Below are positions 1,329-51,832 of a stretch of DNA of 64,000 nucleotides, piece by piece. Made by a program: the position numbers and the translations under genes. A model generated the notes under the pieces. The model did no database searches and was not told the origin of the DNA. It saw only the letters and a program-made list of their open reading frames with translations. Source of the stretch: Schmidtea polychroa. Its lineage: Eukaryota. Location: positions 53,196,001 to 53,260,000 of the forward strand of contig CM097887.1 in assembly GCA_044892525.1 (NCBI GenBank), read 5' to 3'. Each line of letters opens with the position of its first letter. Within the stretch, counting starts at the first letter, position 1.

Positions 1329-1425
1329 TACCGGAAATACCGGCATTGATCCAACTCAATACCGGTATTTCGGTACCAGAAAAAAGTCCGGTAATACCGG
1401 TAGTACCGATACCGGTATACTGGTA
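1329..1425. repeat. Cluster of short TACCGG/ACCGGTAT repeats, probably subterminal repeats of a DNA transposon
   Basis: About 8 degenerate taccgg/accggtat units in about 100 bp, directly before a hAT transposase remnant. Confidence 0.45.
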
Positions 1426-24648: not shown

Positions 24649-24852
24649 NNNNNNNNNNNNNNNNNNNNNNNNNNNNNNNNNNNNNNNNNNNNNNNNNNNN
24701 NNNNNNNNNNNNNNNNNNNNNNNNNNNNNNNNNNNNNNNNNNNNNNNNNNNNNNNNNNNNNNNNNNNNNNNNNNNNNNNNNNNNNNNNNNNNNNNNNNNN
24801 NNNNNNNNNNNNNNNNNNNNNNNNNNNNNNNNNNNNNNNNNNNNNNNNNNNN
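24649..24852. other. Assembly gap (204 N)
   Basis: N run; it hides the left junction and the first 20 bp of LTR1. Confidence 1.
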
Positions 24853-25639
24853 TAAAATAAATTTCACAGGGTACCAGAAAACAGAACAAAAAATGGTAAA
24901 ATCAATATAAGTACAAAATTAATTAAAATTTAATAAAAATTAAAAATCAATATTGAACGGGGGTATCGGGTATGGTTGAATGCCAAATTGTTAGACGAGG
25001 TTAGAAAGTATAATAAAAATGTAATAGGGTGACCATAGAAAAAGTTAATAAGGAAAAACAAATTAATTAAAATTAATTAATCTGTAATGGAAAGCCCGAG
25101 CCAATGGAAAGCCCGAGCCCATGGGAAACCCGAGCACTGAAGAAAACCCGATGCGCAGTGAGACCCGAGACACCAGATAAGGGAATAACAATTCGGATAA
25201 TAATCGCAGGGTAAATAAATTTAAATAATTGTCGAACCGTTCCAAATTTACTTAGGGTGCCCGGGGAAATAATTAATTTCATTTTGTTAGATAATTGGCC
25301 TCTTAAAAACAGTATAAAAGGAGAGCTTAGAAATGAGCAAGCCGCCATTTGGTCGAAGAGAAAAAGGAAAAATCTAAACAGAAAGTCCAGCAGGGACAAG
25401 TTAAAAGAGGAAAATTTGTGAGTTATAAAGAAGCTAAATCGTACAAGACAAGGTAATTACCCCTTGGGTTTCTTACCTTAGCGAACCAAATTCAAATTGA
25501 GAGAAAGGTGCAAATAGTGACAAATTGTAATTGTGATAAAAAGTGAATAAAGTTATTCTGTGTTGAGTTTTCGTTGATTTGGTAAAACAAGGACACGAGG
25601 AGTCAGAGACAGGACCGACTTACAAGTAAAAACTCAACA
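24853..25639 (+). repeat. LTR1 (first 20 bp in gap)
   Basis: Matches 38353-39139 and ends CAACA. TATAAAAG at 25313-25320; AATAAA at 25546-25551. Confidence 0.95.
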
Positions 25640-25642
25640 TTT

Positions 25643-25660
25643 TGGTGAGCCCGACGTGAT
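25643..25660 (+). promoter_or_regulatory. Primer binding site, tRNA-Trp
   Basis: TGGTGAGCCCGACGTGAT begins 3 nt after the LTR end. It is 17/18 identical to the classical tRNA-Trp PBS TGGTGACCCCGACGTGAT. Confidence 0.9.
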
Positions 25661-25744
25661 CAAGTCGGCAGTGAATATTGTGGAAAAGTGAAAAGAGAAA
25701 ATTGAAAATAATTGAAAGTTGAATATAATTGCCAAGATATAAAG

Positions 25745-25895
25745 TGAAATTAAATTTGTTAAAGAGAAATTAAATTGAAAAAGAAAAGAAAAAATTGAAA
25801 TTAAATTTGTTAAAGAGAAATTAAATTGAAAAAGAAAAGAAAAAAATTGAAATTAAATTTGTTAAAGAGAAATTAAATTGAAAAAAAAAAGAGAA
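25745..25895 (+). repeat. Three tandem copies of a 51-52 bp unit in the 5' leader
   Basis: tgaaattaaatttgttaaagagaaattaaattgaaaaa... starts at 25745, 25796 and 25848. Confidence 0.9.
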
Positions 25896-26106
25896 ATTGA
25901 ACAAATTGTGAAGTTGAAATAAAAGAGTGAAAGCTAAAAGATATTGAAATTAAGTTGTGGAAAAGTTACAAAAATTTATAAAAACTATTATTGGAAATTA
26001 ATTCAAAATTAAAACAAAAGGTAAAGTTAAAAATTGTAATTTTTTAAAATTTAGACAAGAAACAGTTGTCCAAGAGAAATTATACAATCTAAGAAGTAAA
26101 AAACAC

Positions 26107-29100
26107 TTGGAAAATATGGCGACGAGCAACTCAAATATCAATGAACAAATCTCAGTGTCTACTACTCAAGCGAACAATGGAAATGATTATGCCAGTTGTC
26201 AAAAGTTACCAGTTGAGCAATATGGAGGAGATCCAGTCCAATTTGTTGACTTTATGGCAGATTACTACATGTATGCCACAGCTTATGGATGGAGCCAAGC
26301 AACTATGGTACAACGTCTACCATTATATTTAAAAGGAGCTGCGCGAGAGGCTTGGCAACAGATTGACAAACGACCTATAGCAAATGATTGGACAAGATTG
26401 AAAGATGCATTGGCAGCCAAGTTGATTGGAGGAGATATAAAGAGAATGATGCGCCAAAAGTTCTACAGTCGAGTGCAAAAGCCCGAGGAATCCATAAGTG
26501 AGTTTGCTTATCATTTAACCACTCTTGCAGAGAAAGCGTTCGAAGTAAAGCCAGATCAAGAAGAAGTAGCAAAGCAAGTCAAAGAATTACTTCAGGACCA
26601 ATTTTTGACAGGAGTCAAGAAAGAAATCAAAAAGGCTTTATGTTTTGTTGATTTTACAAATTTTGATGACTTGATTAGAAAAGCCATGAGAATTGAAATG
26701 AATCTTAAAACGACTCAGTCAAAGGCGGAATCATTTGCGATTATCAATGAGCCTCGAGATAGATCTATAACCCCAGTCAGCGATAACTTGCTTCAAAGAT
26801 CAACCAGTCCATCTCCCAAGTTCAGAGTGAAATTTGAACAAAGAAAGTCAACAGACAGTCCAAATGAGGAAAGAGAAAGAACTCTACAATGCAGTCATTG
26901 CCAGAGAATGGGTCATCACATAAATCAATGCTGGTTTAAAAATAACATTCGAAGAAGCCCTAGTCCGGTTCAGTGTGATTACTGTCAAAGAAAAGGACAT
27001 AGCAATAGCCAATGTTGGTTCAAAAATAACGAACAGCGTAGTCCAAAGGGAATGCGGTCAGAATGGCTGAAAAGTAATGGTGAGAAAAGTTTTAACAGAA
27101 CGAATATCAGTAACCAGAGAACTAATGATAACATACAATGCTATAATTGTGGAAGGAAAGGACATGTCACTCGAAATTGTTTTGCAAGATCCAGATCTCT
27201 ATCAACATCACCCTCACCGCAAAGAGACAGAGTTAACTTACAAGGCCAAATCCAATGTCATTCCTGTAGAGGCTATGGACATATGGCTAGATCTTGTCCA
27301 AAGAGTAATAATATATTTCAAAGGCCGATATTAAAGAAGACGAGATTTCAGAAAGACAAATCGCAATCTGACAATATAGCTTTTGCGCAAACAGATGATT
27401 TTAACGAGAGGATTGAAAATGAGATGAAGCAGATGAGTAGACGCTTGGATCGATTAATGTGCAAATTCGAATCGGACGAAGAATTGAGTAACCACATGAT
27501 GTATGAGTCGCAATCAAAAGGATCAGAGGCAGATTCTAAAGAGAAATTGGATAAAGAAGACATAGAAAGAGAAAAAGTAACAATGATTATACTGAGGATC
27601 AACAGATTTATTAAAGAGAGAGCAACAGAAACATCTAAAGTAATCTCATCGCTAAAGGAATTGAGTCAAATGACAATGAGCATACAAAATTTGAAAAATG
27701 TAATTGAGTTATGTGCCGATTATTATGATACCAATTTAAAAGATGAAAAGGAAATTGAAAATGTGATGCAAATATTTGCGAAAACGTATCGAGAAAGTAC
27801 ATGGTTAGATTTTATTTTAATTAATGTTTTAGATGAAAATGAGAAAGAAGTAGCTTGCATTCGGTGTGAAGCAGGAGATTGTGTAGATGATTTAAAGAAT
27901 AGATTAGAAGAAAATAATGGGAAACAGATAATAGAATTGAAGTTTAAAAATCGATGCTTACGCAATGATGAGTTTTTAATTGATTGTGGTTTTATACCAG
28001 GAAATAAAAATAAAGTGATAGCAAAAATGACAAGACGTTATGAAAATGTAAAAAGCGATCCACAGAAAATTGTAAATGAGCTGAGAGAAGCTTTTGATGA
28101 GTGGAATAAAAATGCAATTGATGAAAAGTTGAAATTAGTAGAGGAAACGGAATTTGACGAAAATAGTAAATTAGAAATTGTAAATGTAGTACGTCCATAT
28201 GTATATAAAAACTCGAAATATAAAGAAATATTAAAAGGTTTATTACGAAAATTTGGAAAAGAGATTAGAGAGACCAGGATAGAATTGAAACCATTTGTAA
28301 TAGCGTTAGATTATAAAAATGAAGGAGAAATAGAGTATATAGAAGAACATTGGTGTACCAAGGTTGGTAAATTGCGAAAGAGAGCCGCTGAAAGAATGGG
28401 AAAGGATGGAATTATTCAATTGATATTTAAAAGTGAAGAATTAGATGACGATGAATATTTATACGATTGTGGGTTTATACCTCAAGAATTAGATGTAGAC
28501 GGATATTTATGTTCAGATACAGGATATTCACTAAATTATGTAATAGTAATTAAAAATCAGATATCAAATAAAGGATATGAGTCCGACAGGTCAAATGATG
28601 AGATAGAAAGGGATAATGAAAATGAAAGAAGAGTTGAAAATGAAGGTGTACTAGATAACAAGGACATAGGAACTAATGATAAAGATAAAGGTATAATAAC
28701 AGAAGTATTAAAGGAAGGGCAAGAAACCAAAAGTGAAGTGAATAGTGAAATAAAGACTAAAAAGCCTAGAACTTTGTATGAAATAAAAAAGAGCCTGGTG
28801 AAGTCAGAATTAGAAGTGGGTGAGACAAAAGAGTTATTAAAGAATTTAGATAAATTAATATATCCAATGTTCGAAATAAAATTGAATACAAAGTACGAAT
28901 TGGGAGACACAGTGAATGAAATGGAAAAGAAACTTCCTAGTGTTATGCAGAGATTTGGTGAAAATGATGACTTTTGTAATAGAGGGGTCATGAAAACTTT
29001 GACGAAAAATGGAATTGATAAAGAAGTAGTACTAACAAGCTTAACATATGCAGTTTTAGAGATAGGAGCTCATAAGATAATGGAATCAGATGAATTAGAG

Positions 29101-32100
29101 AATTTGATAGATGCAGCTGCTCGAGTTTTAAATGAATATTTAATGAATTGGATAAAAAGGAATGGAGGTTGGACCAAACTGGTAAAAGTGCTTACGATAA
29201 ATGAAAATAACGAAATTAATATACCCCATAAATCGCTAAATGGGAGAGTTAGCCCAATATTGAGAAAAACGATGGTATTTCCATGGGTAATGTTTATGAT
29301 AATTGTTTTGTGCGCAATAATTACCCAGACAACCTGTATGACTGCATTTGATTGTTCACAAACGGAAATGGGAAAAATTTATTCGGTAGTAGATGTGTCA
29401 GAATGTTCGGATGCATACCCGAGAAAACTAAAGGTTGAAAAAGATGTAAAATATCATGTATATCAAGAGTCTGATTTAAGACGAACGAAGGTTCGAGAAT
29501 GTATAGTCAAAAGTACCACATTTATATTTTATTGTTGGAAGTGGAGCCATACTTCATTGATAAAGATGTATACAATCCCAAGGCCAGTGGAAGTTATGCC
29601 AGAAAATTGTTTAGCAGCATTTCAAACAGAAGAATTGAAAATAAGTTCGAAAATTAAATTGAAGGCAAAAATAAATCATAGGACGAGAGAAACGGTGGTT
29701 ACGAAAGGATTAATGAAGCAAGACGGAGATTGTGAAGGGGAACCGTACAAAGTCAGTGGTAAAATTATTCAAAAAGCAGTAGTGATAGAAGAATATCTAA
29801 CGGAATTGAGAGAATTTGAAGGAGCTTTTGATGATGATACGGGGAAGTTACAGACCCACCCATTTTGTAATATGAAACAAAATAACTGTCAAACGGGGGG
29901 ATCAATTCTTGTTTATGAAGTAAAAACTAATGTATGTAACTTAGCGCATTTAAAAACGATGAATTTCAAAGAAATTAGTGGAGAGCAGTTTAGGGAAAGG
30001 CCTGACAATATTAATGTAAATTATGGAGTAAATATGACAATCAGATCAACGCCCGTTTGGACAAGAAAAACAGCGACTGTATTAATGTCGATAATTCCGA
30101 TGGACGCCATGCGTTTTATATTAAAGGAAGTTACCAATAAATGTGGTCAGACGGTATACTCCACAAATTACAAAGGAGTTTACGTATCAACAGTAAGAGT
30201 ACAGGAAGCTAAAACGAGAATTCATACGGGTGATATTAAATTAACCCATTACTTTAACAATAAAATTGATTACTTATTTCATTATAGTCAGAACACCATG
30301 GAGAATATCTATCGAGAAATAATCTTAAATGATTGTAAATTAAATAAAGAAATACTTCGAAATCGAATGGCAATGGCCATCACAAACCCAAATTTGGTTG
30401 CACCCATGTTAATATCAGAAAATGGAGTATTTGCGAGAATCTTCGGAGAAGCTTTATATAGTTATAAATGCAAGGAAGTGTCAGTAAAAATAATGAAATA
30501 CGAAAAATGTACTAATGAATTGCCAGTTAGCGTCGATGGGAAGATGCGATTTATGGAACCAATAACACGGATATTACTTGACGAAAACACAAAACCAAAA
30601 TTGCTCCAGTGCAATAGATTGCTAGCCCCGTTATATCTTTTGGCACCAGACTCTTGGGTAGCATTACCCGATTACCGAGGAGTTAGAACTCCAGATAAAT
30701 TGGAATTAATCAATTTAGAGTATTTAGTGAACTTTACATCCCTAAATAAAATGGCACAACTAGGTCTCTACGCAAGCGAGGATATAGAAGAAGCTCAAAG
30801 AAATTTATTATTTCCATCAAAGAAAGAACGGGTGATATCAGAAATGATTGATACAATATTACCAAACGGAGAGAGTAAAGTTAATTATGAATATCTCCTA
30901 ACGCCAGATCATTTCAAAAAAGCAACGTACAAAACGATGGAAAAGATTTGGGGAAAATTTATGTTCTTAGGACAAGCGTGTGCTGGTTTGATTGGCATCT
31001 ATGTGATCGTAGTAACAATAAAGGTGATACTATCTCAAATTTTATCTGCTCATAGAATATATAAAATATCCGGATGGTCGTGGAAAATAATTATTGGTTG
31101 TATTCCGTTTATAGCAAGATTTTTTATTACTCATCATCAATATAAAGAAATGGAGAATGTGAGAGCACAGTTAAAAACGGATCAAAAGAGTGAAGAATCC
31201 TTGTGTGAATCGAGGGATAGAAATAGTGGCAATAACACCAACAATGACAATGGCAGAAACGAGCAAATGTATTTTAGAAAAGAAATAATGAAAAGCGAGG
31301 TAAAACCAGAGTCACGGTGCCTACTAGAACAGATGCCAAAACTTACAGGAATCGACACTCTCTCAAAATGGTATACACCGGTATTCCTTCCAACAGCACC
31401 AACATATCTAAGTGAAAGGCTAAAAGAAATGAAACCAGTAGAACATATTAAACTAGAAGCTGAAAGGATTGAACCAACAAGTGCCGAAATAGAACGGAAA
31501 AACATGCTCGGATTACCATGTAGTTATGCGTTGATGACAATAGGAAATAGAGGCAAACAACCTCGAACAAATATACTATTTAACGAGAGAAAGGTCAAAG
31601 CCTTGTTAGACTCCGGTTCCAGTCATACTATAGTGTCAGATAAACTGTTGACAAGGGAAGAGAGAGCAAAGATGAAACCGACGAATAAAATTATTAAATC
31701 AATGTCTCACAATGTACTGAATATAATCGGGAAGCTAGAAGTCAAATTAATTATTGGTAATCAAGAAATAACACATTATGTGTCAGTAATGAGTAAAAGC
31801 CCTGTTGAATGTCTAATTGGTATGGATGTTATGGAGCAACTGCGAGGAATTGCGCTGGATCTGACAACAGGAAAATTAATAAAGGGACAATTAGATACAG
31901 TTGCAAATAAACCAAGAGAAGTTGTTTTAAATCAAACGTTGGAAATACCAGCAAGAAGCGAAATAATATGTTATGCTAGTGTAGCAAACACGTCAGATGA
32001 CGAATGTGTTTTCGAACCCAGTCGAAAACTAGTAGAGAAATACGAATTGCCAATGTGCGACGAGATAGTACAGGTAAAAGATCAGGCAGTCCCAGTGAGA

Positions 32101-35100
32101 ATGGCTAATCTTAGCACAAAATCTATCCAAATGAAACCTAACACGAAGTTAGGAAAGTTAATGAAATTTAAAACAGAAGAAGCCCAAAAATTACCGAGAA
32201 ACATTAAAATTTATAGAAAACCACAAGTGACGAGCAATGATTTGACAGACGCACAAAAACAACAGTTTATGGCATTATTAAAAAAGTACAAAAGAGTATT
32301 TGCAAAGCACGAGTACGATTTGGGACTTACCCAGGTGATCGAACATGAGATACCACTACTCGATGAAACTCCTATTAAATTACGACCGTATAGAATCCCT
32401 TATATACATCAAGAGGAAAGTGATAGACAGATAAAAGCGATGAAAGAGTTTGACATAATAAGAGACAGTTCATCACCATTCTCATCCTCAATAGTAGTAG
32501 TCAAAAAGAAAGACGGCGATTTACGGTTTTGTGTGGATTATAGAAAATTGAATCAGGCTACAAGAAAAGACCCCTACCCTATTCCAGTTCCACCGGAAAT
32601 GTTTGATCAAATGGGAGAAGTACAATTCATCACAGTAATCGATTTGAATAAGGGATATAATCAATTTAAAGTAAAAGAAGAAGATAGAAGGAAAACGGCA
32701 TTTTCAGATGGTAAAGGTTTGTACGAATTCAATGTGTTACCATTTGGCTTAACGGGAGCGCCAGCCACGTTCCAGCGAGGTATGAATTTTGTATTAAGAG
32801 ACATCCCACACGCATTAGTTTATATTGATGATATAATAATATTTTCGAATAATTTTCAGGAACATTTGGAAGATGTAGAAACAGTATTCCAAAGATTGTT
32901 AAAGGCGAATTTAAAAATAAAACCCTCAAAATGTGAATGGGGGAAATCAGAGGTAGTCTATGTTGGTCATATTATATCCCGAAGAGGATTACAGCCAAAC
33001 CCAGAAAATGTAGAAAAAATTAAAAATTATCCAATTCCAAAAAATGTAGATCATGTTAGACAATTTCTCGGATTAGCCAGTTATTATAGAAAATTCATTA
33101 AAAATTTTGCGCATGTAGCACAACCCCTGAACATATTATTAAAAAAGCAGGCTCAATTTAAATGGACAAAAACACAACAGGAAGCGTTCGAATCGTTGAA
33201 AGAAAGTTTGATTAAAAAACCAATATTGAGATGTCCAAATTTTAAAATACCATTTATCCTAATGACAGATGCGAGCAATTTTGCGTTGGGCGCAGTGCTA
33301 GGACAACAGGTTGAAGGAGAAAGAGATCACGTTATCGCATATGCGAGTAGAACTTTGAAACCGCATGAAAAGAATTATTCTACGATTGAAAAAGAAACGT
33401 TGGCATTAGTTTATGGAATAACTACATTTCGACAGTATTTAGTTGGGAGAAGATTTGTTGTCTTTACGGACCATAACCCTTTACAATGGCTCATGAAGCA
33501 TAGAGATTCAACAAGTAAGTTGATTAGATGGTCAATCGCACTACAGGAATATGATTTTGAAATCAAATACCGTACGGGTAAATCAAATGCAAATGCAGAC
33601 ACACTGTCGAGAATCCCTGAGGAAAATAATAATAATAATGAAAAAACGAACTATAATGATACAATATTTATGGTAATTAAATCAGCAAATAATATAAAGG
33701 AATTACAATATGATCAAGAAAATGATGAGGAACTAAATCAATTACGAAAAAATGCAGTAACAATTAAAAAGGAGAGTGATTGGAAACATATTGTTGAGGA
33801 AAAACATAAATATATTATCCACGAGGGTTTATTAAAATGTGTAAAAAATGAAAATTTGCTAATTATAGTTCCAGCAAAACATCGAGAAGCATTATTGTTG
33901 ATTTACCACGATGGAGCACTAGGAGGACATTTATCGGCTCGAAAAACATTATCAAGACTGAAATTGAAGTATTATTGGGAGACAATGGAACAAGATGTCA
34001 AACAATGGTGCCATACTTGTAAAGTATGTTTGACAAGACGAAATACAGGAAGGAAAATAAAAGTTCCACTAAGACCTATGCCGGTGCCAGCAGCGCCAAT
34101 GGAAATGACAGCAATGGACATTGTCGGTCCATTGCCGGAAACAATAAATGGCAATAAATATATTGTTGTATTTTGCGACTATCTAACTAAGTGGCCAGAA
34201 GCATATGCCATGCAAAATCAAAAGGCAGAAACAGTTGCAAAAATATTAGTAGAAAACATTATTTTCCGATATGGAGCACCAAAGAAATTACTTACAGATC
34301 AGGGAACGAATTTTCAAAGTGAATTATTTAGTTCGATATCGGAGCTATTTGGTATATTAAAACTTAGTACATCACCATATCATCCACAAACAGATGGCCT
34401 AGTAGAAAGGTTTAACGGAACATTAATTAATATGATATCATCTTATGTAAATCGAAAACAAAGAGATTGGGATTTATTTATCAAACCATGTTTATTCGCA
34501 TATCGAAACGCAGTTAATGAAAGCACTGGTGAAACACCCTTTTATCTTATGTATCTACGGCGAAATAATATGCCAATTGATTTGAAATTTCAAACACCTA
34601 TATCACAGTATATGGATATATCCGATTATAAAGTAATCATGCATGAGAGATTACAGTCAGTGTGGGCTCAAGCTGGTTTAAAAATAAGACATAGCCAAGA
34701 AACGTATAAAGAATCCTACTACAAGAAAGCACATGCTCATAATATTAAAATAGGAGATTTAGTCTATGTGAATAAACCAGAACCAGAAAAGGGCTTGTCA
34801 CCAAAGTTACAACGACCGTTTAAAGGACCGTATATTGTATGTGATACAACAGAAACCAACCTCAAATTACATCCACAGAATAATAAAAAGGCTGGGACAA
34901 TTATAGTTCATGCAAATCGTTGTAAGAAAGTGCCGGCAATGGAGAGTGATAGATATCCATTAAGATCGAAAAAGAACAAATCAGTAGAAGAAAAAGTGGT
35001 CAAGCAAAAAGTTATTAAAAACCCAGTACCCTTAGGATATACCACGAAAGTCTTATTGATAACAACAATGATGCTACTAAATGTTTTGGGAACAAAGGCA

Positions 35101-36261
35101 GGTAGATCTTTTCCAAAGTATGCAATAAAAAGGGTCCCATTATTGGATAAAATTCATATATATTCAACATGTACCCAAATAGTATGGTTTTATCTGTGTG
35201 GGTCAACGGAAGAAATAGAAATAAGTAATCTATTAAATCACTTTAACCCACCTGTAAGATTGAATTTCAATAAAAATATTTTCGTGGCTCGTCAATTAAC
35301 AGTCAATTATGAATACACTTGGCAAATAACAGAGTTACTATTTCAAAATAATAATACAAAAATACGTAATATAATCCAAATTGAAATATTAACAAAAAAT
35401 TTAAACAGTCTGGTTTCAATAGAACCAGTAGTGAATGGAATCGACGTATATTGGGAACCCCACGAATCCCAAAAAGTGAAATTAATATTCCAAAATAATA
35501 TTATCGATACATTAAACATCAGAAAACCCTTTGTCCATTACAATAATTTAAAATTAAATCAAACGTATGATATCGTTGTGCAATATTATGAAAAGCTTTT
35601 GCGGGAAAATGGTACCGAAATCGATAACCAGTGGGTAAAAATTGAGTCTACTCGACAATCCATAAAATTAGAAAATGAACCAAATCGTATTATTTTACGA
35701 TATGATAATCAAAAATGGATAGCCACACGACAAGCGATAACCAATAACAAAGTGGAAATTTATTATTGCGGAAAACTGCAAGCTATATTGCAAGGTAATA
35801 TTACATCTAAAATATTAACATTTCAGCAAATACGTTCAAAGTCAACTTCAAAAATTGTGATTGTAAAGATAAAATATTATCAACGTGCTTTTCATCCCGA
35901 TCATTGGAAAATCGTTCTAGTGGAAAGTAAATCTATTCGAGTACCATTTGATACAGCTGAGGTAGAAAGCTCAAAAAATATGCACAATTCATCAACCAAT
36001 GTGATTCATCAACTCATAAATGACATTAATTCTTCTTTTATTAATGGAACACAAATTCCAAGAAATAAAACTACATTCTCATTATCAAATGATTTTGAAA
36101 ATACTTATGTTATTTTGTCATCTATCATCATCAGTGTGACACCATTTTCCATTATCATTCTTCTCACTCTACTGATTTACTTTCAAAGACTGAACAGACA
36201 ATATGAATGTCAATCCAAGACCTCACAACCTTGGATTGTCTACGAGGAAACATGGGTCTAG
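26107..36261 (+). CDS. Gag-UBL-UBL-Bcl2-like-Env-PR-RT-RH-IN-membrane protein polyprotein, copy 1 (3384 aa; first ATG 26116)
   Basis: Retrotransposon Gag core; 4 CX2CX4HX4C knuckles (26890-27297); WIKRNGGW (29149); signal segment (29272-29337); Cys-rich glycoprotein with TM (29338-31131); LLDSGS (31609); YIDD (32821); TDAS..E..TDH (33268 onward); HHCC, DDE and GPY integrase (about 33850-34940); C-terminal TM (36109-36183). Confidence 0.97.
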   Translation: MENMATSNSNINEQISVSTTQANNGNDYASCQKLPVEQYGGDPVQFVDFMADYYMYATAYGWSQATMVQRLPLYLKGAAREAWQQIDKRPIANDWTRLKDALAAKLIGGDIKRMMRQKFYSRVQKPEESISEFAYHLTTLAEKAFEVKPDQEEVAKQVKELLQDQFLTGVKKEIKKALCFVDFTNFDDLIRKAMRIEMNLKTTQSKAESFAIINEPRDRSITPVSDNLLQRSTSPSPKFRVKFEQRKSTDSPNEERERTLQCSHCQRMGHHINQCWFKNNIRRSPSPVQCDYCQRKGHSNSQCWFKNNEQRSPKGMRSEWLKSNGEKSFNRTNISNQRTNDNIQCYNCGRKGHVTRNCFARSRSLSTSPSPQRDRVNLQGQIQCHSCRGYGHMARSCPKSNNIFQRPILKKTRFQKDKSQSDNIAFAQTDDFNERIENEMKQMSRRLDRLMCKFESDEELSNHMMYESQSKGSEADSKEKLDKEDIEREKVTMIILRINRFIKERATETSKVISSLKELSQMTMSIQNLKNVIELCADYYDTNLKDEKEIENVMQIFAKTYRESTWLDFILINVLDENEKEVACIRCEAGDCVDDLKNRLEENNGKQIIELKFKNRCLRNDEFLIDCGFIPGNKNKVIAKMTRRYENVKSDPQKIVNELREAFDEWNKNAIDEKLKLVEETEFDENSKLEIVNVVRPYVYKNSKYKEILKGLLRKFGKEIRETRIELKPFVIALDYKNEGEIEYIEEHWCTKVGKLRKRAAERMGKDGIIQLIFKSEELDDDEYLYDCGFIPQELDVDGYLCSDTGYSLNYVIVIKNQISNKGYESDRSNDEIERDNENERRVENEGVLDNKDIGTNDKDKGIITEVLKEGQETKSEVNSEIKTKKPRTLYEIKKSLVKSELEVGETKELLKNLDKLIYPMFEIKLNTKYELGDTVNEMEKKLPSVMQRFGENDDFCNRGVMKTLTKNGIDKEVVLTSLTYAVLEIGAHKIMESDELENLIDAAARVLNEYLMNWIKRNGGWTKLVKVLTINENNEINIPHKSLNGRVSPILRKTMVFPWVMFMIIVLCAIITQTTCMTAFDCSQTEMGKIYSVVDVSECSDAYPRKLKVEKDVKYHVYQESDLRRTKVRECIVKSTTFIFYCWKWSHTSLIKMYTIPRPVEVMPENCLAAFQTEELKISSKIKLKAKINHRTRETVVTKGLMKQDGDCEGEPYKVSGKIIQKAVVIEEYLTELREFEGAFDDDTGKLQTHPFCNMKQNNCQTGGSILVYEVKTNVCNLAHLKTMNFKEISGEQFRERPDNINVNYGVNMTIRSTPVWTRKTATVLMSIIPMDAMRFILKEVTNKCGQTVYSTNYKGVYVSTVRVQEAKTRIHTGDIKLTHYFNNKIDYLFHYSQNTMENIYREIILNDCKLNKEILRNRMAMAITNPNLVAPMLISENGVFARIFGEALYSYKCKEVSVKIMKYEKCTNELPVSVDGKMRFMEPITRILLDENTKPKLLQCNRLLAPLYLLAPDSWVALPDYRGVRTPDKLELINLEYLVNFTSLNKMAQLGLYASEDIEEAQRNLLFPSKKERVISEMIDTILPNGESKVNYEYLLTPDHFKKATYKTMEKIWGKFMFLGQACAGLIGIYVIVVTIKVILSQILSAHRIYKISGWSWKIIIGCIPFIARFFITHHQYKEMENVRAQLKTDQKSEESLCESRDRNSGNNTNNDNGRNEQMYFRKEIMKSEVKPESRCLLEQMPKLTGIDTLSKWYTPVFLPTAPTYLSERLKEMKPVEHIKLEAERIEPTSAEIERKNMLGLPCSYALMTIGNRGKQPRTNILFNERKVKALLDSGSSHTIVSDKLLTREERAKMKPTNKIIKSMSHNVLNIIGKLEVKLIIGNQEITHYVSVMSKSPVECLIGMDVMEQLRGIALDLTTGKLIKGQLDTVANKPREVVLNQTLEIPARSEIICYASVANTSDDECVFEPSRKLVEKYELPMCDEIVQVKDQAVPVRMANLSTKSIQMKPNTKLGKLMKFKTEEAQKLPRNIKIYRKPQVTSNDLTDAQKQQFMALLKKYKRVFAKHEYDLGLTQVIEHEIPLLDETPIKLRPYRIPYIHQEESDRQIKAMKEFDIIRDSSSPFSSSIVVVKKKDGDLRFCVDYRKLNQATRKDPYPIPVPPEMFDQMGEVQFITVIDLNKGYNQFKVKEEDRRKTAFSDGKGLYEFNVLPFGLTGAPATFQRGMNFVLRDIPHALVYIDDIIIFSNNFQEHLEDVETVFQRLLKANLKIKPSKCEWGKSEVVYVGHIISRRGLQPNPENVEKIKNYPIPKNVDHVRQFLGLASYYRKFIKNFAHVAQPLNILLKKQAQFKWTKTQQEAFESLKESLIKKPILRCPNFKIPFILMTDASNFALGAVLGQQVEGERDHVIAYASRTLKPHEKNYSTIEKETLALVYGITTFRQYLVGRRFVVFTDHNPLQWLMKHRDSTSKLIRWSIALQEYDFEIKYRTGKSNANADTLSRIPEENNNNNEKTNYNDTIFMVIKSANNIKELQYDQENDEELNQLRKNAVTIKKESDWKHIVEEKHKYIIHEGLLKCVKNENLLIIVPAKHREALLLIYHDGALGGHLSARKTLSRLKLKYYWETMEQDVKQWCHTCKVCLTRRNTGRKIKVPLRPMPVPAAPMEMTAMDIVGPLPETINGNKYIVVFCDYLTKWPEAYAMQNQKAETVAKILVENIIFRYGAPKKLLTDQGTNFQSELFSSISELFGILKLSTSPYHPQTDGLVERFNGTLINMISSYVNRKQRDWDLFIKPCLFAYRNAVNESTGETPFYLMYLRRNNMPIDLKFQTPISQYMDISDYKVIMHERLQSVWAQAGLKIRHSQETYKESYYKKAHAHNIKIGDLVYVNKPEPEKGLSPKLQRPFKGPYIVCDTTETNLKLHPQNNKKAGTIIVHANRCKKVPAMESDRYPLRSKKNKSVEEKVVKQKVIKNPVPLGYTTKVLLITTMMLLNVLGTKAGRSFPKYAIKRVPLLDKIHIYSTCTQIVWFYLCGSTEEIEISNLLNHFNPPVRLNFNKNIFVARQLTVNYEYTWQITELLFQNNNTKIRNIIQIEILTKNLNSLVSIEPVVNGIDVYWEPHESQKVKLIFQNNIIDTLNIRKPFVHYNNLKLNQTYDIVVQYYEKLLRENGTEIDNQWVKIESTRQSIKLENEPNRIILRYDNQKWIATRQAITNNKVEIYYCGKLQAILQGNITSKILTFQQIRSKSTSKIVIVKIKYYQRAFHPDHWKIVLVESKSIRVPFDTAEVESSKNMHNSSTNVIHQLINDINSSFINGTQIPRNKTTFSLSNDFENTYVILSSIIISVTPFSIIILLTLLIYFQRLNRQYECQSKTSQPWIVYEETWV

Positions 36262-36622
36262 TGAGATACATTTATTTTGCATGCAATTATGATATTATAA
36301 TAGTACTGTATTAGTAGTAACTTTTATGATAGTTGTAAAATTTGCACCTTTCAATCAAAGAGAAATATGATTGGCTGAGAGGGATAGAAAAATAAATATG
36401 AACTAAATTTTATGGGAAAGAAAATTTAATAACTGTACATAAGGGGTCGTAAAAATAATTAAAATCAGTTTAATTAATTCAATCAAAAAATTAAGATCTT
36501 TCAAAATTGAATAGGTAAATTTTTATTAATATTTATTATTTATACAGTGATCACCAAGGCAGTGCCCCTGAGGTACTCTACCGTGTTGATCACTTCAATC
36601 TTAAATTCTAACAAATTTAATA

Positions 36623-38065
36623 GTGAATATTTCAGTAATGGAACAAATCCAAAGAACTAGAGCAATTTATGATGGATATTTGAAGATACACCGCAACCAC
36701 GTGGGACAAGATGCCATCACCATCAATGACAACCTGAAAATCCCAAACTACTTGAGGGTGGACGACAGAAAAATGAAAACTCAAATTTTTAAAGTGAGCC
36801 GGAAATCGGTGAAAATAATAGAAGAAGATGAAATCAAGGATGGAAATGAGTACACGCTACACGTGATCAAAGGGAAAGTGGAGGTAATAGACGAACGACA
36901 AAAAGTCTATTGGGAATTACACCAAGGATCATCGTGGAAACTGCAGAAAGAAACCTTGAGGAAAAGGTTGAGAGCATCCAATGAAGATTCAAGAGTTGTT
37001 GTGGAAACACGAAGCCCGAACGAGGAAAATGAAATTCCACAAACCACTTCAAAATTGCCAGATGATCCAACCATGCTTCCAATTACTACAGAAATGCTGA
37101 AAAGAAGATGGTCATTTATTCGAAAAGAAATGAGTTTGGAGGAGATACGGAACCGAATTGTGTTTATGGATGCAGAATATGGAACATCAGAAAATAATAA
37201 AATGATTCCATTGTCAATAGCGATGATGAATTATGAAGGGAAAATAATTAAAAATTCATATTTGACACCAAGAGGAAGATTGCGTCATTTCAATTCCAGC
37301 ATTCATGGTATCACAGAGATTGCCAGTAGAAACCAATGCGACCAGTACACGGAGATGCGAGAAGTGCAAAAACTAACTGTTGGAAAAATTTTAGTGGGAC
37401 ATGATCTTCATGCAGAATTGGAATATTTGAAAATCTGGACAAATCAGTTGTACGGAATTAGGGATTTAGCAACAGCACAGGCACTCCAACTGAAAGGAAT
37501 AACAAGGAAAGGAGAATTCTTTAAACTTAAAACAGTGGTTGAAGAAGTACTCGGAGAACAAACACAAACTGGTATTCACTCAGCATTGGAAGATGTCAAA
37601 AAAGTACGGAGAGTGTACAGGGAAATTGAGAATTTATGGGAAGATGATGTAAAAATCCAGAAAATAGTCCCATCAAAGAAATATTCTTTAGCCGAATATC
37701 AAAAACTTCATGCGATGGACAAAATACCAACAACGAGTGGAACATCCTGTGAGATAGTAGAACAAGTTGATCTAACAATTGAGGAACAAATGGAAATTGA
37801 CGAAGCACCGTTGAAATGGGCAACGGAAGAATATTTGGAGCCGATCAAGGAAAGCCTCGAAATGATAATAAGTTCATCGATCCACAGAATTCCGGCATCA
37901 TTCGAACATGGGCCTATACTTCATTTAGAGAATAGGAAAAGAAAATCGACAACAAAAATCGAAGCCAGCGAATCCATCATGGTGAATGGAATAGTCTATT
38001 ATCGGGAGAAAACATATATCCGCTACAAGAGTGAGGCGGGAGAAATAGAATTAAAAATTGATTAA
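36623..38065 (+). CDS. ORF2, copy 1: REX4/ISG20-like DEDDh 3'-5' exonuclease with N-terminal beta-rich domain (first ATG 36638)
   Basis: VFMDAEYG (Exo I, 37169), IHGIT, ILVGHDLHAEL (Exo II, 37397), IRDL, GIHSALEDV (Exo III, 37577). Confidence 0.9.
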   Translation: MNISVMEQIQRTRAIYDGYLKIHRNHVGQDAITINDNLKIPNYLRVDDRKMKTQIFKVSRKSVKIIEEDEIKDGNEYTLHVIKGKVEVIDERQKVYWELHQGSSWKLQKETLRKRLRASNEDSRVVVETRSPNEENEIPQTTSKLPDDPTMLPITTEMLKRRWSFIRKEMSLEEIRNRIVFMDAEYGTSENNKMIPLSIAMMNYEGKIIKNSYLTPRGRLRHFNSSIHGITEIASRNQCDQYTEMREVQKLTVGKILVGHDLHAELEYLKIWTNQLYGIRDLATAQALQLKGITRKGEFFKLKTVVEEVLGEQTQTGIHSALEDVKKVRRVYREIENLWEDDVKIQKIVPSKKYSLAEYQKLHAMDKIPTTSGTSCEIVEQVDLTIEEQMEIDEAPLKWATEEYLEPIKESLEMIISSSIHRIPASFEHGPILHLENRKRKSTTKIEASESIMVNGIVYYREKTYIRYKSEAGEIELKID

Positions 38066-38319
38066 TTATTGTTATATATGTTATGATTAATAAAAACTTT
38101 CCCTCGTCTTATATATATAGTAACAAATTATTATTATTATTATTATTGTTATTGTTACTATTATCATATTATTATTATTACTATTATTATTAATTCACTA
38201 CTATTATTAGTGATACTATTATTATAAAATTATTATAAAGTATCGTTATGGTATTGAGAATACTCTTCCATCTTAATAAATAATTAATAATCGAATAGAT
38301 TCGAGGGCGAATCTTAATT

Positions 38320-38330
38320 AAAGGGGGAGA
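38320..38330 (+). promoter_or_regulatory. Polypurine tract, copy 1
   Basis: AAAGGGGGAGA, separated by 2 nt from the LTR start TGTTG at 38333. Confidence 0.9.
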
Positions 38331-38332
38331 TA

Positions 38333-39139
38333 TGTTGGGGTTAGAGCAAAAATAAAATAAATTTCACAGGGTACCAGAAAACAGAACAAAAAATGGTAAA
38401 ATCAATATAAGTACAAAATTAATTAAAATTTAATAAAAATTAAAAATCAATATTGAACGGGGGTATCGGGTATGGTTGAATGCCAAATTGTTAGACGAGG
38501 TTAGAAAGTATAATAAAAATGTAATAGGGTGACCATAGAAAAAGTTAATAAGGAAAAACAAATTAATTAAAATTAATTAATCTGTAATGGAAAGCCCGAG
38601 CCAATGGAAAGCCCGAGCCCATGGGAAACCCGAGCACTGAAGAAAACCCGATGCGCAGTGAGACCCGAGACACCAGATAAGGGAATAACAATTCGGATAA
38701 TAATCGCAGGGTAAATAAATTTAAATAATTGTCGAACCGTTCCAAATTTACTTAGGGTGCCCGGGGAAATAATTAATTTCATTTTGTTAGATAATTGGCC
38801 TCTTAAAAACAGTATAAAAGGAGAGCTTAGAAATGAGCAAGCCGCCATTTGGTCGAAGAGAAAAAGGAAAAATCTAAACAGAAAGTCCAGCAGGGACAAG
38901 TTAAAAGAGGAAAATTTGTGAGTTATAAAGAAGCTAAATCGTACAAGACAAGGTAATTACCCCTTGGGTTTCTTACCTTAGCGAACCAAATTCAAATTGA
39001 GAGAAAGGTGCAAATAGTGACAAATTGTAATTGTGATAAAAAGTGAATAAAGTTATTCTGTGTTGAGTTTTCGTTGATTTGGTAAAACAAGGACACGAGG
39101 AGTCAGAGACAGGACCGACTTACAAGTAAAAACTCAACA
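38333..39139 (+). repeat. LTR2 (shared middle LTR, 807 bp)
   Basis: TGTTG...CAACA termini, preceded by the PPT and followed by the PBS. Confidence 0.97.
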
Positions 39140-39142
39140 TTT

Positions 39143-39160
39143 TGGTGAGCCCGACGTGAT
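39143..39160 (+). promoter_or_regulatory. Primer binding site, tRNA-Trp, copy 2
   Basis: TGGTGAGCCCGACGTGAT. Confidence 0.9.
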
Positions 39161-39244
39161 CAAGTCGGCAGTGAATATTGTGGAAAAGTGAAAAGAGAAA
39201 ATTGAAAATAATTGAAAGTTGAATATAATTGCCAAGATATAAAG

Positions 39245-39395
39245 TGAAATTAAATTTGTTAAAGAGAAATTAAATTGAAAAAGAAAAGAAAAAATTGAAA
39301 TTAAATTTGTTAAAGAGAAATTAAATTGAAAAAGAAAAGAAAAAAATTGAAATTAAATTTGTTAAAGAGAAATTAAATTGAAAAAAAAAAGAGAA
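39245..39395 (+). repeat. 5' leader tandem repeat, copy 2
   Basis: Identical to 25745-25895. Confidence 0.9.
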
Positions 39396-39606
39396 ATTGA
39401 ACAAATTGTGAAGTTGAAATAAAAGAGTGAAAGCTAAAAGATATTGAAATTAAGTTGTGGAAAAGTTACAAAAATTTATAAAAACTATTATTGGAAATTA
39501 ATTCAAAATTAAAACAAAAGGTAAAGTTAAAAATTGTAATTTTTTAAAATTTAGACAAGAAACAGTTGTCCAAGAGAAATTATACAATCTAAGAAGTAAA
39601 AAACAC

Positions 39607-49761: not shown

Positions 49762-50122
49762 TGAGATACATTTATTTTGCATGCAATTATGATATTATAA
49801 TAGTACTGTATTAGTAGTAACTTTTATGATAGTTGTAAAATTTGCACCTTTCAATCAAAGAGAAATATGATTGGCTGAGAGGGATAGAAAAATAAATATG
49901 AACTAAATTTTATGGGAAAGAAAATTTAATAACTGTACATAAGGGGTCGTAAAAATAATTAAAATCAGTTTAATTAATTCAATCAAAAAATTAAGATCTT
50001 TCAAAATTGAATAGGTAAATTTTTATTAATATTTATTATTTATACAGTGATCACCAAGGCAGTGCCCCTGAGGTACTCTACCGTGTTGATCACTTCAATC
50101 TTAAATTCTAACAAATTTAATA

Positions 50123-51565: not shown

Positions 51566-51819
51566 TTATTGTTATATATGTTATGATTAATAAAAACTTT
51601 CCCTCGTCTTATATATATAGTAACAAATTATTATTATTATTATTATTGTTATTGTTACTATTATCATATTATTATTATTACTATTATTATTAATTCACTA
51701 CTATTATTAGTGATACTATTATTATAAAATTATTATAAAGTATCGTTATGGTATTGAGAATACTCTTCCATCTTAATAAATAATTAATAATCGAATAGAT
51801 TCGAGGGCGAATCTTAATT

Positions 51820-51830
51820 AAAGGGGGAGA
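51820..51830 (+). promoter_or_regulatory. Polypurine tract, copy 2
   Basis: AAAGGGGGAGA before TGTTG at 51833. Confidence 0.9.
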
Positions 51831-51832
51831 TA

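What the first reader, a model, noticed from the sequence alone, without database searches (positions are those of the whole stretch)
24833..39139. Candidate new system: enveloped Gypsy retroelement with a virus-like accessory set
Seen: an intact element with near-identical LTRs, PBS, PPT, a 10 kb ORF and a second ORF. Beyond Gag and Pol it carries two ubiquitin-like domains, a Bcl-2-like domain, a Cys-rich fusion glycoprotein, a PTAP motif, a second type-I membrane glycoprotein and a DEDDh exonuclease. Established: Metaviridae normally encode gag-pol with or without a 3' env, while viral Bcl-2 homologues, receptor mimics and immune-evasion exonucleases are typical of large DNA viruses or arenaviruses. 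Inference: this may be an infectious, complex retrovirus-like lineage that modulates host cell death and RNA sensing. From memory, giant planarian Gypsy elements (Burro) were described with large single polyproteins and extra domains; that prior art is unverified and must be checked before claiming novelty.
Basis: partly seen in the sequence, partly recalled or inferred. Interest (0 to 1): 0.95.

Follow-up and report, generated by a model that had tools for sequence, protein, structure and literature searches.

The report
Compact Burro-like enveloped Gypsy retroelement, tandem
This is a young, fully open-reading virus-like Gypsy retroelement in an animal genome whose giant polyprotein carries two ubiquitin-like domains, a Bcl-2-like domain and an RNA-virus-type fusion glycoprotein between Gag and Pol, plus a separate exonuclease gene; the core layout was already published for planarian "Burro" elements, so it is a new variant of a known kind rather than a new system.

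Summary
The element has 807-bp LTRs (TGTTG…CAACA), a PPT, a PBS-like TGG, an uninterrupted 3381-aa ORF1 and a 475-aa ORF2. Profile searches recover the fusion glycoprotein (PF24664, E = 2e-87), two ubiquitin-like domains, a Bcl-2-like domain (best E = 2e-5 against Bcl-xL) and an ISG20-type DEDDh exonuclease with all five catalytic residues. The "second membrane glycoprotein" rests on sequence features alone.

The element is a head-to-tail dimer (LTR–int–LTR–int–LTR, 24853–52639) with 100% identical units. The first LTR's 5' end is hidden in the assembly gap, so the fully read unit is 38333–52639.

The novelty claim fails on its own criterion. Arkhipova & Yushenova 2019 (PMC6431247) describe planarian Burro/GYPSM1 polyproteins as Gag–SUMO-like(PF11976)–BCL2–in-frame Env (mononegavirus-like)–PR–RT–RH–IN, and already suggest proviruses that meddle with apoptosis and ubiquitination.

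Possibly new: the compact size (14.3 kb); an exonuclease ORF downstream of the polyprotein in five of the six relatives with enough downstream sequence; and an orphan C-terminal membrane module. All functions are inferred.

The parts
24649..24852 (.). Assembly gap (N run, 204) at the 5' edge of the array. It hides the start of LTR1 and the left junction.
24853..25639 (+). LTR1, visible part (787 of 807 nt), identical to LTR2.
25643..25661 (+). PBS-like site (begins TGG, 3 nt after the LTR). tRNA not identified. The same site lies at 39143-39161 in unit 2.
25683..25947 (+). 51-52-nt tandem repeats in the 5' leader (also at 39183-39447).
26116..36261 (+). ORF1, a 3381-aa polyprotein, uninterrupted (0 stops, 0 frameshifts). 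Its copy in unit 2 is 39616-49761.
26116..27315 (+). Gag region (residues 1-400): Retrotrans_gag at 69-152 and four CCHC knuckles at 259-394.
27721..28011 (+). Ubiquitin-like domain 1 (residues ~536-632).
28198..28500 (+). Ubiquitin-like domain 2 (residues ~695-795). This block is conserved in relatives; the P0009 equivalent hits PF00240 and PF11976.
28912..29217 (+). Bcl-2-like domain (residues ~933-1034) with an invariant GGW motif at 1017-1019.
29269..31272 (+). Env, a Monjiviricetes-type fusion glycoprotein (PF24664). Signal-like segment 1052-1070, ectodomain with 12 family-invariant Cys, TM 1621-1645, tail to 1719.
31390..31401 (+). PTAP motif (residues 1759-1762) between the Env tail and protease.
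31555..31845 (+). Aspartic protease (residues 1814-1910).
32500..33552 (+). Reverse transcriptase (2129-2287, YIDD) and RNase H (2350-2479).
33868..34950 (+). Integrase (H2C2 zinc finger, catalytic core, C-terminal part; residues 2585-~2945).
34993..36258 (+). Orphan C-terminal module (residues 2960-3381): signal-like segment 2979-2993, 9 N-x-S/T sites, TM 3333-3355. No homologue found and fold unknown.
36638..38065 (+). ORF2 (475 aa). ISG20/REX4-type DEDDh exonuclease domain at residues ~170-340 (nt 37145-37657), with D178, E180, D256, H314 and D319 present. Its copy in unit 2 is 50138-51565.
38320..38329 (+). Polypurine tract AAAGGGGGAG (also at 51820-51829).
38333..39139 (+). LTR2 (807 bp), shared by both units. 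TATAAA at 38813, AATAAA at 39046, 17-nt repeats at 38586-38635.
39140..51832 (+). Internal region of unit 2, 100% identical to that of unit 1. With LTR2 and LTR3 it forms the fully read unit 38333-52639 (14,307 bp).
51833..52639 (+). LTR3 (806/807 identical to LTR2), followed by AT-rich host flank.

Best explanation
**What it is.** A very young Ty3/Gypsy (Metaviridae-type) endogenous retrovirus-like element with intact coding capacity. It belongs to, or sits next to, the planarian 'Burro' lineage. It is present as a head-to-tail dimer that shares the middle LTR.

**Shown.**
- One uninterrupted ORF encodes Gag, UBL, UBL, a Bcl-2-like domain, Env, PR, RT, RNase H, IN and a C-terminal membrane module.
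- A second ORF encodes an ISG20-type DEDDh exonuclease.
- The same gene order recurs in relatives that share only ~50% (Pol) and 24-40% (Env) identity.

**Inferred mechanism.**
- The genomic RNA is transcribed from the LTR, which carries a TATA box and an AATAAA signal.
- The polyprotein is translated as one chain. The hydrophobic segment 1052-1070, which aligns to the start of the glycoprotein family model, acts as an internal signal sequence.
- The Env ectodomain therefore enters the ER lumen. The TM at 1621-1645 returns the chain to the cytosol, where PR-RT-RH-IN stay.
- Signal peptidase and the element's protease would release the parts. Cleavage after the signal would leave the Gag-UBL-Bcl-2-like product membrane-anchored at its C-terminus, as cellular Bcl-2 proteins are.
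- Env would allow enveloped particles and cell-to-cell spread.
- The Bcl-2-like and UBL domains would act on host cell-death and ubiquitin-type pathways.
- The exonuclease would act on RNA 3' ends. My preferred reading is host small RNAs or RNA that triggers sensing. Processing of the element's own nucleic acid is the alternative.
For: - **Anatomy and integrity:**
- **Env:** PF24664 at E = 2e-87 over nearly the whole model, including its N-terminus at the hydrophobic segment. Twelve Cys are invariant across 9 sequences.
- **UBLs:** the family profile returns only ubiquitin, ISG15 and NEDD8 among its top 60 PDB hits. The two copies match each other at E = 4e-11. The P0009 equivalent hits PF00240 and PF11976.
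- **Bcl-2-like:** sub-threshold PF00452 hits in three members at the same position. A 3-member profile gives only Bcl-xL, Bcl-2 and Bok in its top 60, best E = 2e-5.
- **Exonuclease:** profile hits to ISG20L2 (1.4e-22), ISG20 (8e-19) and SDN1 (1e-14). PF00929 is found in 4 of 5 members. The DEDDh pentad is conserved.
- **Lineage conservation of order and of ORF2:** L002, L003, L004, L006 and L007.
- **Youth:** LTRs differ at 1 of 807 positions.
- **Published Burro architecture:** PMC6431247.
Against: - No expression, protein-processing or particle data exist; every functional step is inference.
- The Bcl-2-like hit is below Pfam's gathering score (25.9 against 31.4 bits), and its model was unusable (pLDDT 43). 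I found no BH1- or BH3-type core.
- The window's own UBL segments hit no Pfam model on their own.
- A second hydrophobic stretch (1653-1672) follows the Env TM. If it also spans the membrane, the proposed topology would be wrong.
- The PBS tRNA is unidentified.
- No Burro reference sequence could be compared, so lineage membership rests on architecture alone.
- The host is unidentified. It is an animal with AT-rich DNA, but planarian origin is not shown.
Confidence: 0.78

Rival explanations
1. The tandem dimer is an assembly artefact. The genome holds a single element (LTR-int-LTR) at this locus, and the assembler laid the repeat down twice next to a scaffold gap.
For: - The two units are 100% identical over 14,275 bp.
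- The array abuts an N gap.
- Giant Gypsy repeats are a documented assembly problem in AT-rich planarian genomes (PMC11410931).
Against: - LTR3 differs from LTR1 and LTR2 at one base. That pattern is what an unequal LTR-LTR exchange in a real dimer would give, and a pure duplication artefact would not be expected to produce it.
- The right junction with host sequence is contiguous.
- LTR-int-LTR-int-LTR arrays are a known natural product of unequal recombination (established knowledge).
Confidence: 0.35
2. The element is a strictly intracellular retrotransposon. Env, the Bcl-2-like domain, the UBLs and the exonuclease are passenger sequences with no role in its life cycle.
For: - No furin-type cleavage site was found in Env.
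- Env sits inside the polyprotein, an unusual position for expression as a membrane protein.
- There is no direct evidence of particles.
Against: - The same parts keep the same order in relatives at 24-50% identity, with long open frames.
- 12 Cys are invariant in Env, and the DEDDh pentad is conserved in ORF2 homologues. Both indicate purifying selection.
- A signal-like segment and a TM flank the ectodomain at the positions the family model predicts.
Confidence: 0.12
3. The element is not a Burro relative. It is an independent Gypsy lineage that assembled a similar accessory set by convergence.
For: - It is half the size of Burro (14.3 kb against more than 30 kb).
- It lacks the MATH, BIR, ankyrin and dUTPase motifs listed for Burro.
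- No sequence comparison with Burro was possible.
Against: - The order Gag, SUMO-like/UBL (the same Pfam PF11976 in relatives), BCL2-like, in-frame mononegavirus-type Env, PR-RT-RH-IN is specific. The 2019 paper called it the first case of its kind.
- Relatives of the window element carry ankyrin repeats.
- Convergence on this whole order is unlikely.
Confidence: 0.15
4. The sequence is unintegrated or contaminating viral DNA (for example a concatemer) wrongly joined to host sequence.
For: - The structure is head to tail.
- The left junction is unreadable (the gap).
- Relatives occur in environmental metagenomes.
Against: - The right LTR runs directly into AT-rich sequence of the same composition as the rest of the window, which carries animal gene and transposon fragments.
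- The collection of viral contigs holds no relative.
- A PPT, a PBS-like site and TG...CA LTRs are the marks of an integrated provirus.
Confidence: 0.04

Closest known systems
Burro / GYPSM1 giant Gypsy-like LTR retrotransposons of planarians (Jurka 2007; Grohme et al. 2018; re-annotated by Arkhipova & Yushenova 2019, PMC6431247)
   Same: - A single huge ORF1 with Gag (Retrotrans_gag plus CCHC knuckles), a Ubi2/SUMO-like motif, a BCL2-like motif and an env in frame between gag and pol that hits mononegavirus fusion glycoproteins, then PR-RT-RH-IN.
- Accessory ORFs and tandem repeats in the element.
- An AT-rich animal host.
   Different: - This element is 14.3 kb against more than 30 kb, and ORF1 is 3381 aa against 4873-5140 aa.
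- No MATH, AIR1, Smc, BIR, ankyrin or dUTPase motif was detected here.
- It has two UBLs in tandem.
- An ISG20-type DEDDh exonuclease ORF and an orphan C-terminal membrane module are not mentioned in the Burro description I could read.
- No direct sequence comparison was possible.
Anakin (BEL/Pao retrotransposon with a captured chuvirus glycoprotein, mosquitoes; PMC7642597)
   Same: An LTR retroelement carrying a glycoprotein of Monjiviricetes (Jingchuvirales) type, which its authors interpret as the origin of a retrovirus-like agent.
   Different: - It belongs to another superfamily (BEL/Pao, not Gypsy).
- Its glycoprotein lies downstream of pol, not in frame between gag and pol.
- It has no UBL, Bcl-2-like or exonuclease genes.
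Errantiviruses (gypsy, ZAM and relatives of insects)
   Same: Ty3/Gypsy elements with an env gene and infectious properties (established knowledge).
   Different: - Their env is a separate 3' ORF expressed from a spliced mRNA.
- It is related to baculovirus F protein, not to PF24664.
ISG20 / ISG20L2 / REX4 / SDN1 DEDDh 3'-5' exonucleases (PDB 1wlj, 7yw5, 5z9x)
   Same: The ORF2 family profile matches them at E = 1e-22 to 1e-14, with the D-E-D-H-D catalytic positions conserved.
   Different: - ORF2 has extra N-terminal (~170 aa) and C-terminal (~135 aa) regions of unknown fold.
- It is encoded by a retroelement, not a host gene.
- The window's own ORF2 does not reach PF00929 by itself.
Cellular and viral Bcl-2 family proteins
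   Same: Profile similarity to Bcl-xL, Bcl-2 and Bok over ~85-90 residues, with a GGW-containing motif followed by a hydrophobic segment.
   Different: - It lies below Pfam's gathering score.
- No BH1- or BH3-type core was found.
- It is embedded in a polyprotein.
- The fold is not confirmed.
Other mobile elements with accessory DEDD exonucleases: KolobokD DNA transposons (DEDDh; PMC9587614) and rotifer Terminons (DEDDy; PMC6431247)
   Same: A mobile element that carries its own 3'-5' exonuclease as an accessory gene.
   Different: - They belong to different element classes (a DNA transposon and a Penelope-like retroelement).
- Their exonucleases belong to different subfamilies (TREX/ERI1-like and DEDDy).

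Membership tests
Ty3/Gypsy (Metaviridae-type) LTR retroelement | Direct LTRs with TG...CA termini | tested here: met
   The LTRs are 807 bp with TGTTG...CAACA ends. LTR2 and LTR3 are 806/807 identical.
Ty3/Gypsy (Metaviridae-type) LTR retroelement | Domain order PR-RT-RNase H-IN, with Gag upstream | tested here: met
   Pfam places the domains in that order. Motifs were checked. The integrase C-terminal part hits the Ty3 structure 7q5b.
Ty3/Gypsy (Metaviridae-type) LTR retroelement | PPT before the 3' LTR and a tRNA-complementary PBS after the 5' LTR | tested here: inconclusive
   A PPT is present. A TGG-initiated site lies 3 nt after the LTR, but no tRNA was available to match it.
Ty3/Gypsy (Metaviridae-type) LTR retroelement | Target-site duplication | not testable with these tools
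   The left junction lies in the N gap, which must not be filled.
Ty3/Gypsy (Metaviridae-type) LTR retroelement | RT phylogeny within Metaviridae | not tested
   No reference set (GyDB or Repbase) was available. The nearest non-family hits are Gypsy-type polyproteins.
Burro-like lineage (planarian giant Gypsy) | Env in frame between gag and pol, related to mononegavirus fusion glycoproteins | tested here: met
   PF24664 lies inside ORF1 between the Bcl-2-like domain and PR.
Burro-like lineage (planarian giant Gypsy) | Ubi2/SUMO-like and BCL2-like motifs upstream of env | tested here: met
   (PF11976 in P0009).
Burro-like lineage (planarian giant Gypsy) | Gigantic size (over 30 kb) with MATH, BIR, ankyrin and dUTPase motifs | tested here: not met
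   The element is 14.3 kb and none of these motifs was found in the window. Ankyrin repeats occur only in relatives.
Burro-like lineage (planarian giant Gypsy) | Sequence relatedness to the Burro-1 to -4 / GYPSM1 references, and a planarian host | not testable with these tools
   No reference sequence or host identity could be obtained.
PF24664 Monjiviricetes fusion glycoprotein | Score above the curated cut-off over most of the model, with a signal peptide and a C-terminal TM | tested here: met
   293.9 bits against a cut-off of 27, covering model positions 5-647 of 653. Hydrophobic segments lie at 1052-1070 and 1621-1645.
Bcl-2 family (PF00452) | Score above Pfam's gathering threshold | tested here: not met
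   25.9 bits against a threshold of 31.4.
Bcl-2 family (PF00452) | Profile-level homology to solved Bcl-2 proteins | tested here: met
   The top 60 hits of profile A5 are all Bcl-xL, Bcl-2 or Bok, with E = 2e-5 to 5e-4.
Bcl-2 family (PF00452) | Helical-bundle fold with a BH3-binding groove | tested here: inconclusive
   The AlphaFold2 model has pLDDT 43, so no fold search was run.
Ubiquitin-like (beta-grasp) domains | Profile-level homology to ubiquitin, NEDD8 or ISG15 | tested here: met
   The top 60 hits of profile A1 are all ubiquitin-family proteins. The best single-domain hits are ISG15 (1.3e-4) and NEDD8 (9e-4).
Ubiquitin-like (beta-grasp) domains | Pfam threshold reached, and the fold confirmed | tested here: not met
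   The window's segments give no Pfam hit. P0009 reaches 23.6 bits against a threshold of 25.4.
DEDDh exonuclease (RNase_T PF00929; ISG20/REX4 subfamily) | Homology plus all five catalytic residues (D, E, D, H, D) | tested here: met

The most novel reading that the evidence does not exclude
The ISG20/SDN-type DEDDh exonuclease ORF is a conserved accessory gene of a whole lineage of enveloped Gypsy retroelements, and has not been described before. Two readings remain open. It could be a counter-defence that removes host small RNAs (piRNA or siRNA) or RNA that triggers sensing. It could instead provide 3'-end editing that helps these unusually large retro-genomes to be copied faithfully. The orphan C-terminal membrane module would be a further, lineage-private surface or ER protein.
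Probability: 0.25. Interest if true: 0.8.

Novelty: new variant of a known kind. Interest (0 to 1): 0.5.

Why it matters
- **A tractable example.** Burro-type elements are the only Gypsy elements reported with env fused in frame between gag and pol and with apoptosis- and ubiquitin-related domains, but they are huge and hard to study. A compact 14.3-kb member with every frame open gives a clean example of the architecture.
- **Conservation across a wider family.** The metagenome relatives show that the accessory set is kept across a broader family, not just in one genome.
- **The exonuclease.** If the ORF's linkage to this lineage holds, it adds a retroelement to the short list of reverse-transcribing or RNA agents that carry their own 3'-5' exonuclease. 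It also gives a concrete candidate for interplay with PIWI/small-RNA control, which is known to restrain Burro in planarians (PMC8532177).
- **Assembly quality.** The perfect tandem dimer next to a gap is a flag for anyone using this assembly.

Tried and rejected
- **Structure models.** The AlphaFold2 model of the Bcl-2-like segment with a 7-sequence alignment reached only pLDDT 43. The single-sequence model of the C-terminal module reached 31.6. Both are too poor to use, so I ran no fold search.
- **Mixed Bcl-2 profile.** A 7-member profile (A2) lost the Bcl-2 signal. The cleaner 3-member profile (A5) recovered it.
- **Single-sequence searches.** The window's UBL segments and ORF2 gave nothing in Pfam on their own. 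The 400-935 segment and Env gave nothing in PDB sequence searches.
- **Accessory region.** An exhaustive search of residues 400-1055 found only 9 relatives and no cellular homologue.
- **C-terminal module.** No homologue was found.
- **Exact-product look-ups.** ORF1, ORF2 and P0035 are not on record, so the host and a copy census could not be obtained.
- **RNA features.** No tRNA gene or Rfam family was found in the window. The hairpin at the PBS is no better than shuffled sequence (z = -0.63) and was dropped.
- **Collection scans.** The viral-contig scan with the Env alignment found nothing. The exonuclease alignment was too divergent for a pattern scan.
- **Literature.** Grohme et al. 2018 is not held, so I could not check whether an exonuclease ORF was already listed for Burro.
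In one search, and again, I also searched for the PTAP letters quoted in the finding. Treat all of these as leads, not tests.
  - While reasoning, I also recalled the BH2 motif of two cellular proteins.
  - I used none of the consensus lines that the alignment tool printed by itself.

Full report
**1. The gap and the overall structure**

The window has two N runs, 24649-24852 and 56065-56195. The first sits exactly at the element's 5' edge.
- Sequence resumes at 24853 inside an LTR.
- The 1 kb to the left of the gap has no similarity to any part of the element. As far as can be read, the array therefore begins at this LTR.
- No reading frame crosses the gap, since ORF1 starts at 26116.
- Continuity across the gap and a target-site duplication cannot be tested.

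A self-comparison shows that 24853-39127 is 100% identical to 38353-52627, an offset of 13,500. Both long ORFs occur twice.

Reading the junctions gives the following.
- The LTRs are 807 bp with TGTTG...CAACA ends.
- LTR2 is 38333-39139. LTR3 is 51833-52639 and is 806/807 identical to LTR2.
- LTR1 is visible from 24853 to 25639 and matches LTR2 at 787/787. Its first 20 nt would lie in the N run if the gap size were exact.

Other landmarks:
- PPT AAAGGGGGAG lies 3 nt upstream of LTR2 and LTR3.
- A TGG-initiated PBS-like site lies 3 nt downstream of LTR1 and LTR2. No tRNA gene is available to match it, and a hairpin there is not significant.
- The LTR carries TATAAA (38813) and AATAAA (39046).
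- 52-nt tandem repeats occupy the leader.

**2. Coding capacity**

ORF1 (26116-36261, 3381 aa from the ATG) and ORF2 (36638-38065, 475 aa) contain no stops in either unit. Nothing is broken: 0 stops and 0 frameshifts. At this base composition, the chance of such open frames is 3e-127 for ORF1 and 5e-16 for its last 422 codons.

Pfam places the following in ORF1, numbered from the ATG:

| Feature | Residues |
|---|---|
| Retrotrans_gag | 69-152 |
| CCHC knuckle (Pfam hit; one of four) | 341-355 |
| Bcl-2 (25.9 bits, below the 31.4 cut-off) | 933-1019 |
| PF24664 Monjiviricetes fusion glycoprotein (E = 2.3e-87, model positions 5-647 of 653) | ~1059-1719 |
| Protease | 1814-1910 |
| Reverse transcriptase (YIDD) | 2129-2287 |
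| RNase H | 2350-2479 |
| Integrase | from 2585 |

Hydrophobic segments lie at 1052-1070 (aligned to the start of the glycoprotein model), 1621-1645 and 3333-3355.

**3. The claimed accessory domains**

*Fusion glycoprotein: confirmed.* Twelve cysteines are invariant across nine family sequences of 24-40% identity. It has no solved relative by sequence.

*Two ubiquitin-like domains: supported.*
- Residues ~536-632 and ~695-795 match each other (36% identity, E = 4e-11).
- Both align to a single conserved block in relatives.
- The profile of that block returns only ubiquitin-family chains among its top 60 PDB hits, for example ISG15 at 1.3e-4 and NEDD8 at 9e-4.
- The equivalent block of relative P0009 hits PF00240 and PF11976.
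- The window's own segments do not reach Pfam by themselves.

*Bcl-2-like domain: supported at profile level, but the fold is unconfirmed.*
- Three members give sub-threshold PF00452 hits at the same pre-Env position.
- A profile of the window, L007 and L001 segments returns only Bcl-xL, Bcl-2 and Bok in its top 60, with E = 2e-5 to 5e-4 over ~85-90 residues.
- A GGW motif is invariant.
- The AlphaFold2 model was unusable (pLDDT 43).

*DEDDh exonuclease: confirmed in ORF2.*
- ORF2 alone hits ISG20L2 (1.2e-7) and ISG20.
- The family profile hits ISG20L2 (1.4e-22), ISG20 (7.9e-19) and SDN1 (1.3e-14).
- Four of five members match PF00929.
- D178, E180, D256, H314 and D319 align with the catalytic positions.

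*PTAP.* It is present once, at residue 1759, between the Env tail and protease; 0.013 is expected by chance. Three relatives carry PPxY or P(T/S)AP in the equivalent tail, so the motif recurs but is not universal.

*Second type-I membrane glycoprotein: not verifiable.* After the integrase ends (~2945) there is a signal-like segment (2979-2993), about 335 residues with 9 N-x-S/T sites, a TM segment and a short tail. The module has no homologue in relatives or in the large protein collection, and its model has pLDDT 31.6.

**4. Relatives**

The large protein collection holds a small family of 2,100-4,057-aa polyproteins that carry PF24664 together with PR-RT-RH-IN. They share about 50% identity in Pol, 31-40% in Env and 25-31% in Gag, and they keep the UBL block.

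Their contigs come from ENA and JGI metagenome assemblies. Nothing related is in the viral-contig collection.

An ORF2 homologue lies directly downstream of the polyprotein in L002, L003, L004, L006 and L007.
- L002 has two paralogues, and the first has lost all five catalytic residues.
- L009 has none within the 3.1 kb that follow its integrase.
- L001 ends too early to tell.

L007 carries the entire set (UBL, Bcl-2-like, Env, PR, RT, IN) in one 3426-codon open frame, followed by the exonuclease ORF.

The accessory region itself is rare. Only 9 of 1.84 billion representative proteins match it.

**5. Host context**

The flanks hold a nuclear-receptor zinc-finger exon (E = 5e-29), a FAD-binding exon-like ORF, a hAT fragment and a piggyBac-type fragment. 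Their G+C content is about 28%. The host is therefore an animal with very AT-rich DNA. That is compatible with a planarian (over 70% A/T is reported for S. mediterranea, PMC11410931) but does not prove it.

**6. Prior art**

Arkhipova & Yushenova 2019 (PMC6431247) describe Burro (Grohme et al. 2018), which is the same as GYPSM1 (Jurka 2007).
- ORF1 is 4,873-5,140 aa, with Gag plus CCHC knuckles.
- A Ubi2/SUMO-like motif (PF11976) lies upstream of BCL-2.
[quoted passage not shown] - They propose that Burro elements are integrated proviruses that meddle with apoptosis and ubiquitination.

This is the same core order and the same idea as the finding. A full-text search for that combination of terms returned only this paper.

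Burro expression is restrained by the PIWI protein SMEDWI-2 (PMC8532177).

The Burro description I could read names no exonuclease. A search for DEDDh exonucleases in LTR retrotransposons found none, although KolobokD DNA transposons carry DEDDh and Terminons carry DEDDy. The primary genome paper is not held, so this gap in the prior art is provisional.

A comparable glycoprotein capture is known in mosquitoes (Anakin). It involves a Pao element, with env downstream of pol (PMC7642597).

**7. Mechanism (inferred)**

- The polyprotein would be threaded through the ER membrane by its internal signal segment and the Env TM. That places the Env ectodomain in the lumen and both Gag-UBL-Bcl-2-like and PR-RT-RH-IN in the cytosol.
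- Signal peptidase and the element's protease would separate the parts. Cleavage after the signal would leave the Bcl-2-like product anchored at its C-terminus.
- A second hydrophobic stretch at 1653-1672 is a caveat for this topology.
- The Bcl-2-like and UBL domains plausibly act on host death and ubiquitin-type pathways.
- For the exonuclease I favour an action on host small RNAs or on RNA that triggers sensing. The SDN1 and ISG20 likeness and the known PIWI control of Burro point that way. A role in processing the element's own nucleic acid is the alternative.
- None of this has been tested.

**8. The tandem dimer**

Perfect identity next to a gap makes an assembly artefact a serious possibility (about one in three). 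Against it, LTR1 and LTR2 are identical and differ from LTR3 at one base, which is the pattern expected from an unequal LTR-LTR exchange in a real dimer.

**9. Verdict**

- The interpretation as a new system is not supported, because the core architecture is published.
- The compact form, the lineage-wide ISG20-type exonuclease ORF and the orphan membrane module make it a new variant of a known kind, of moderate interest.

**10. Slips**

They are leads only. I did not use the consensus lines that the alignment tool printed.

Noticed in passing
window 56065-56195: A second assembly gap (131 N) lies in the right flank, outside the element.
   Followed up: no
window 60656-61054 (-): An exon-like ORF encodes a nuclear-receptor C4 zinc-finger DNA-binding domain (PF00105, E = 5e-29). 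It shows that the host is an animal.
   Followed up: partly
window 1297-1704 (+), 63110-63625 (+), 9914-10420 (+): A hAT dimerisation-domain fragment, a piggyBac-type transposase fragment (PF13843, E = 7e-24) and a FAD_binding_3 exon-like ORF lie in the flanks.
   Followed up: no
window 19280-19467 (-): A weak match (67%, E = 9e-11) to LTR positions 76-283. It may be a decayed fragment of a related LTR, or simply AT-rich similarity.
   Followed up: no
window 38586-38635, 39241-39401, 51627-51736: A 17-nt x 2.9 repeat in the LTR U3 region, a 52-nt x 3.2 repeat in the 5' leader, and an (ATT)n tract between ORF2 and the PPT.
   Followed up: no
L002 12411-13973 and 14249-15688: This relative carries two exonuclease paralogues in tandem. 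The first has lost all five DEDDh residues and the second keeps them.
   Followed up: partly
P0006-P0012 (L001-L006): The relatives carry two or three protease-like domains per polyprotein. P0009 has ankyrin repeats between Env and PR, so the accessory slots vary between members.
   Followed up: partly
P0013; L005 17034-24564: One relative is labelled as a Flavobacteriaceae MAG protein. Another contig shows bacterial-type genes next to the element. These are probably mis-binned or chimeric metagenome contigs, not bacterial carriage.
   Followed up: no
window ORF1 residues 1653-1672 (nt ~31072-31131): A second hydrophobic stretch lies a few residues after the Env transmembrane segment, inside the part covered by the PF24664 model. 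Whether it spans the membrane bears on the proposed polyprotein topology.
   Followed up: no
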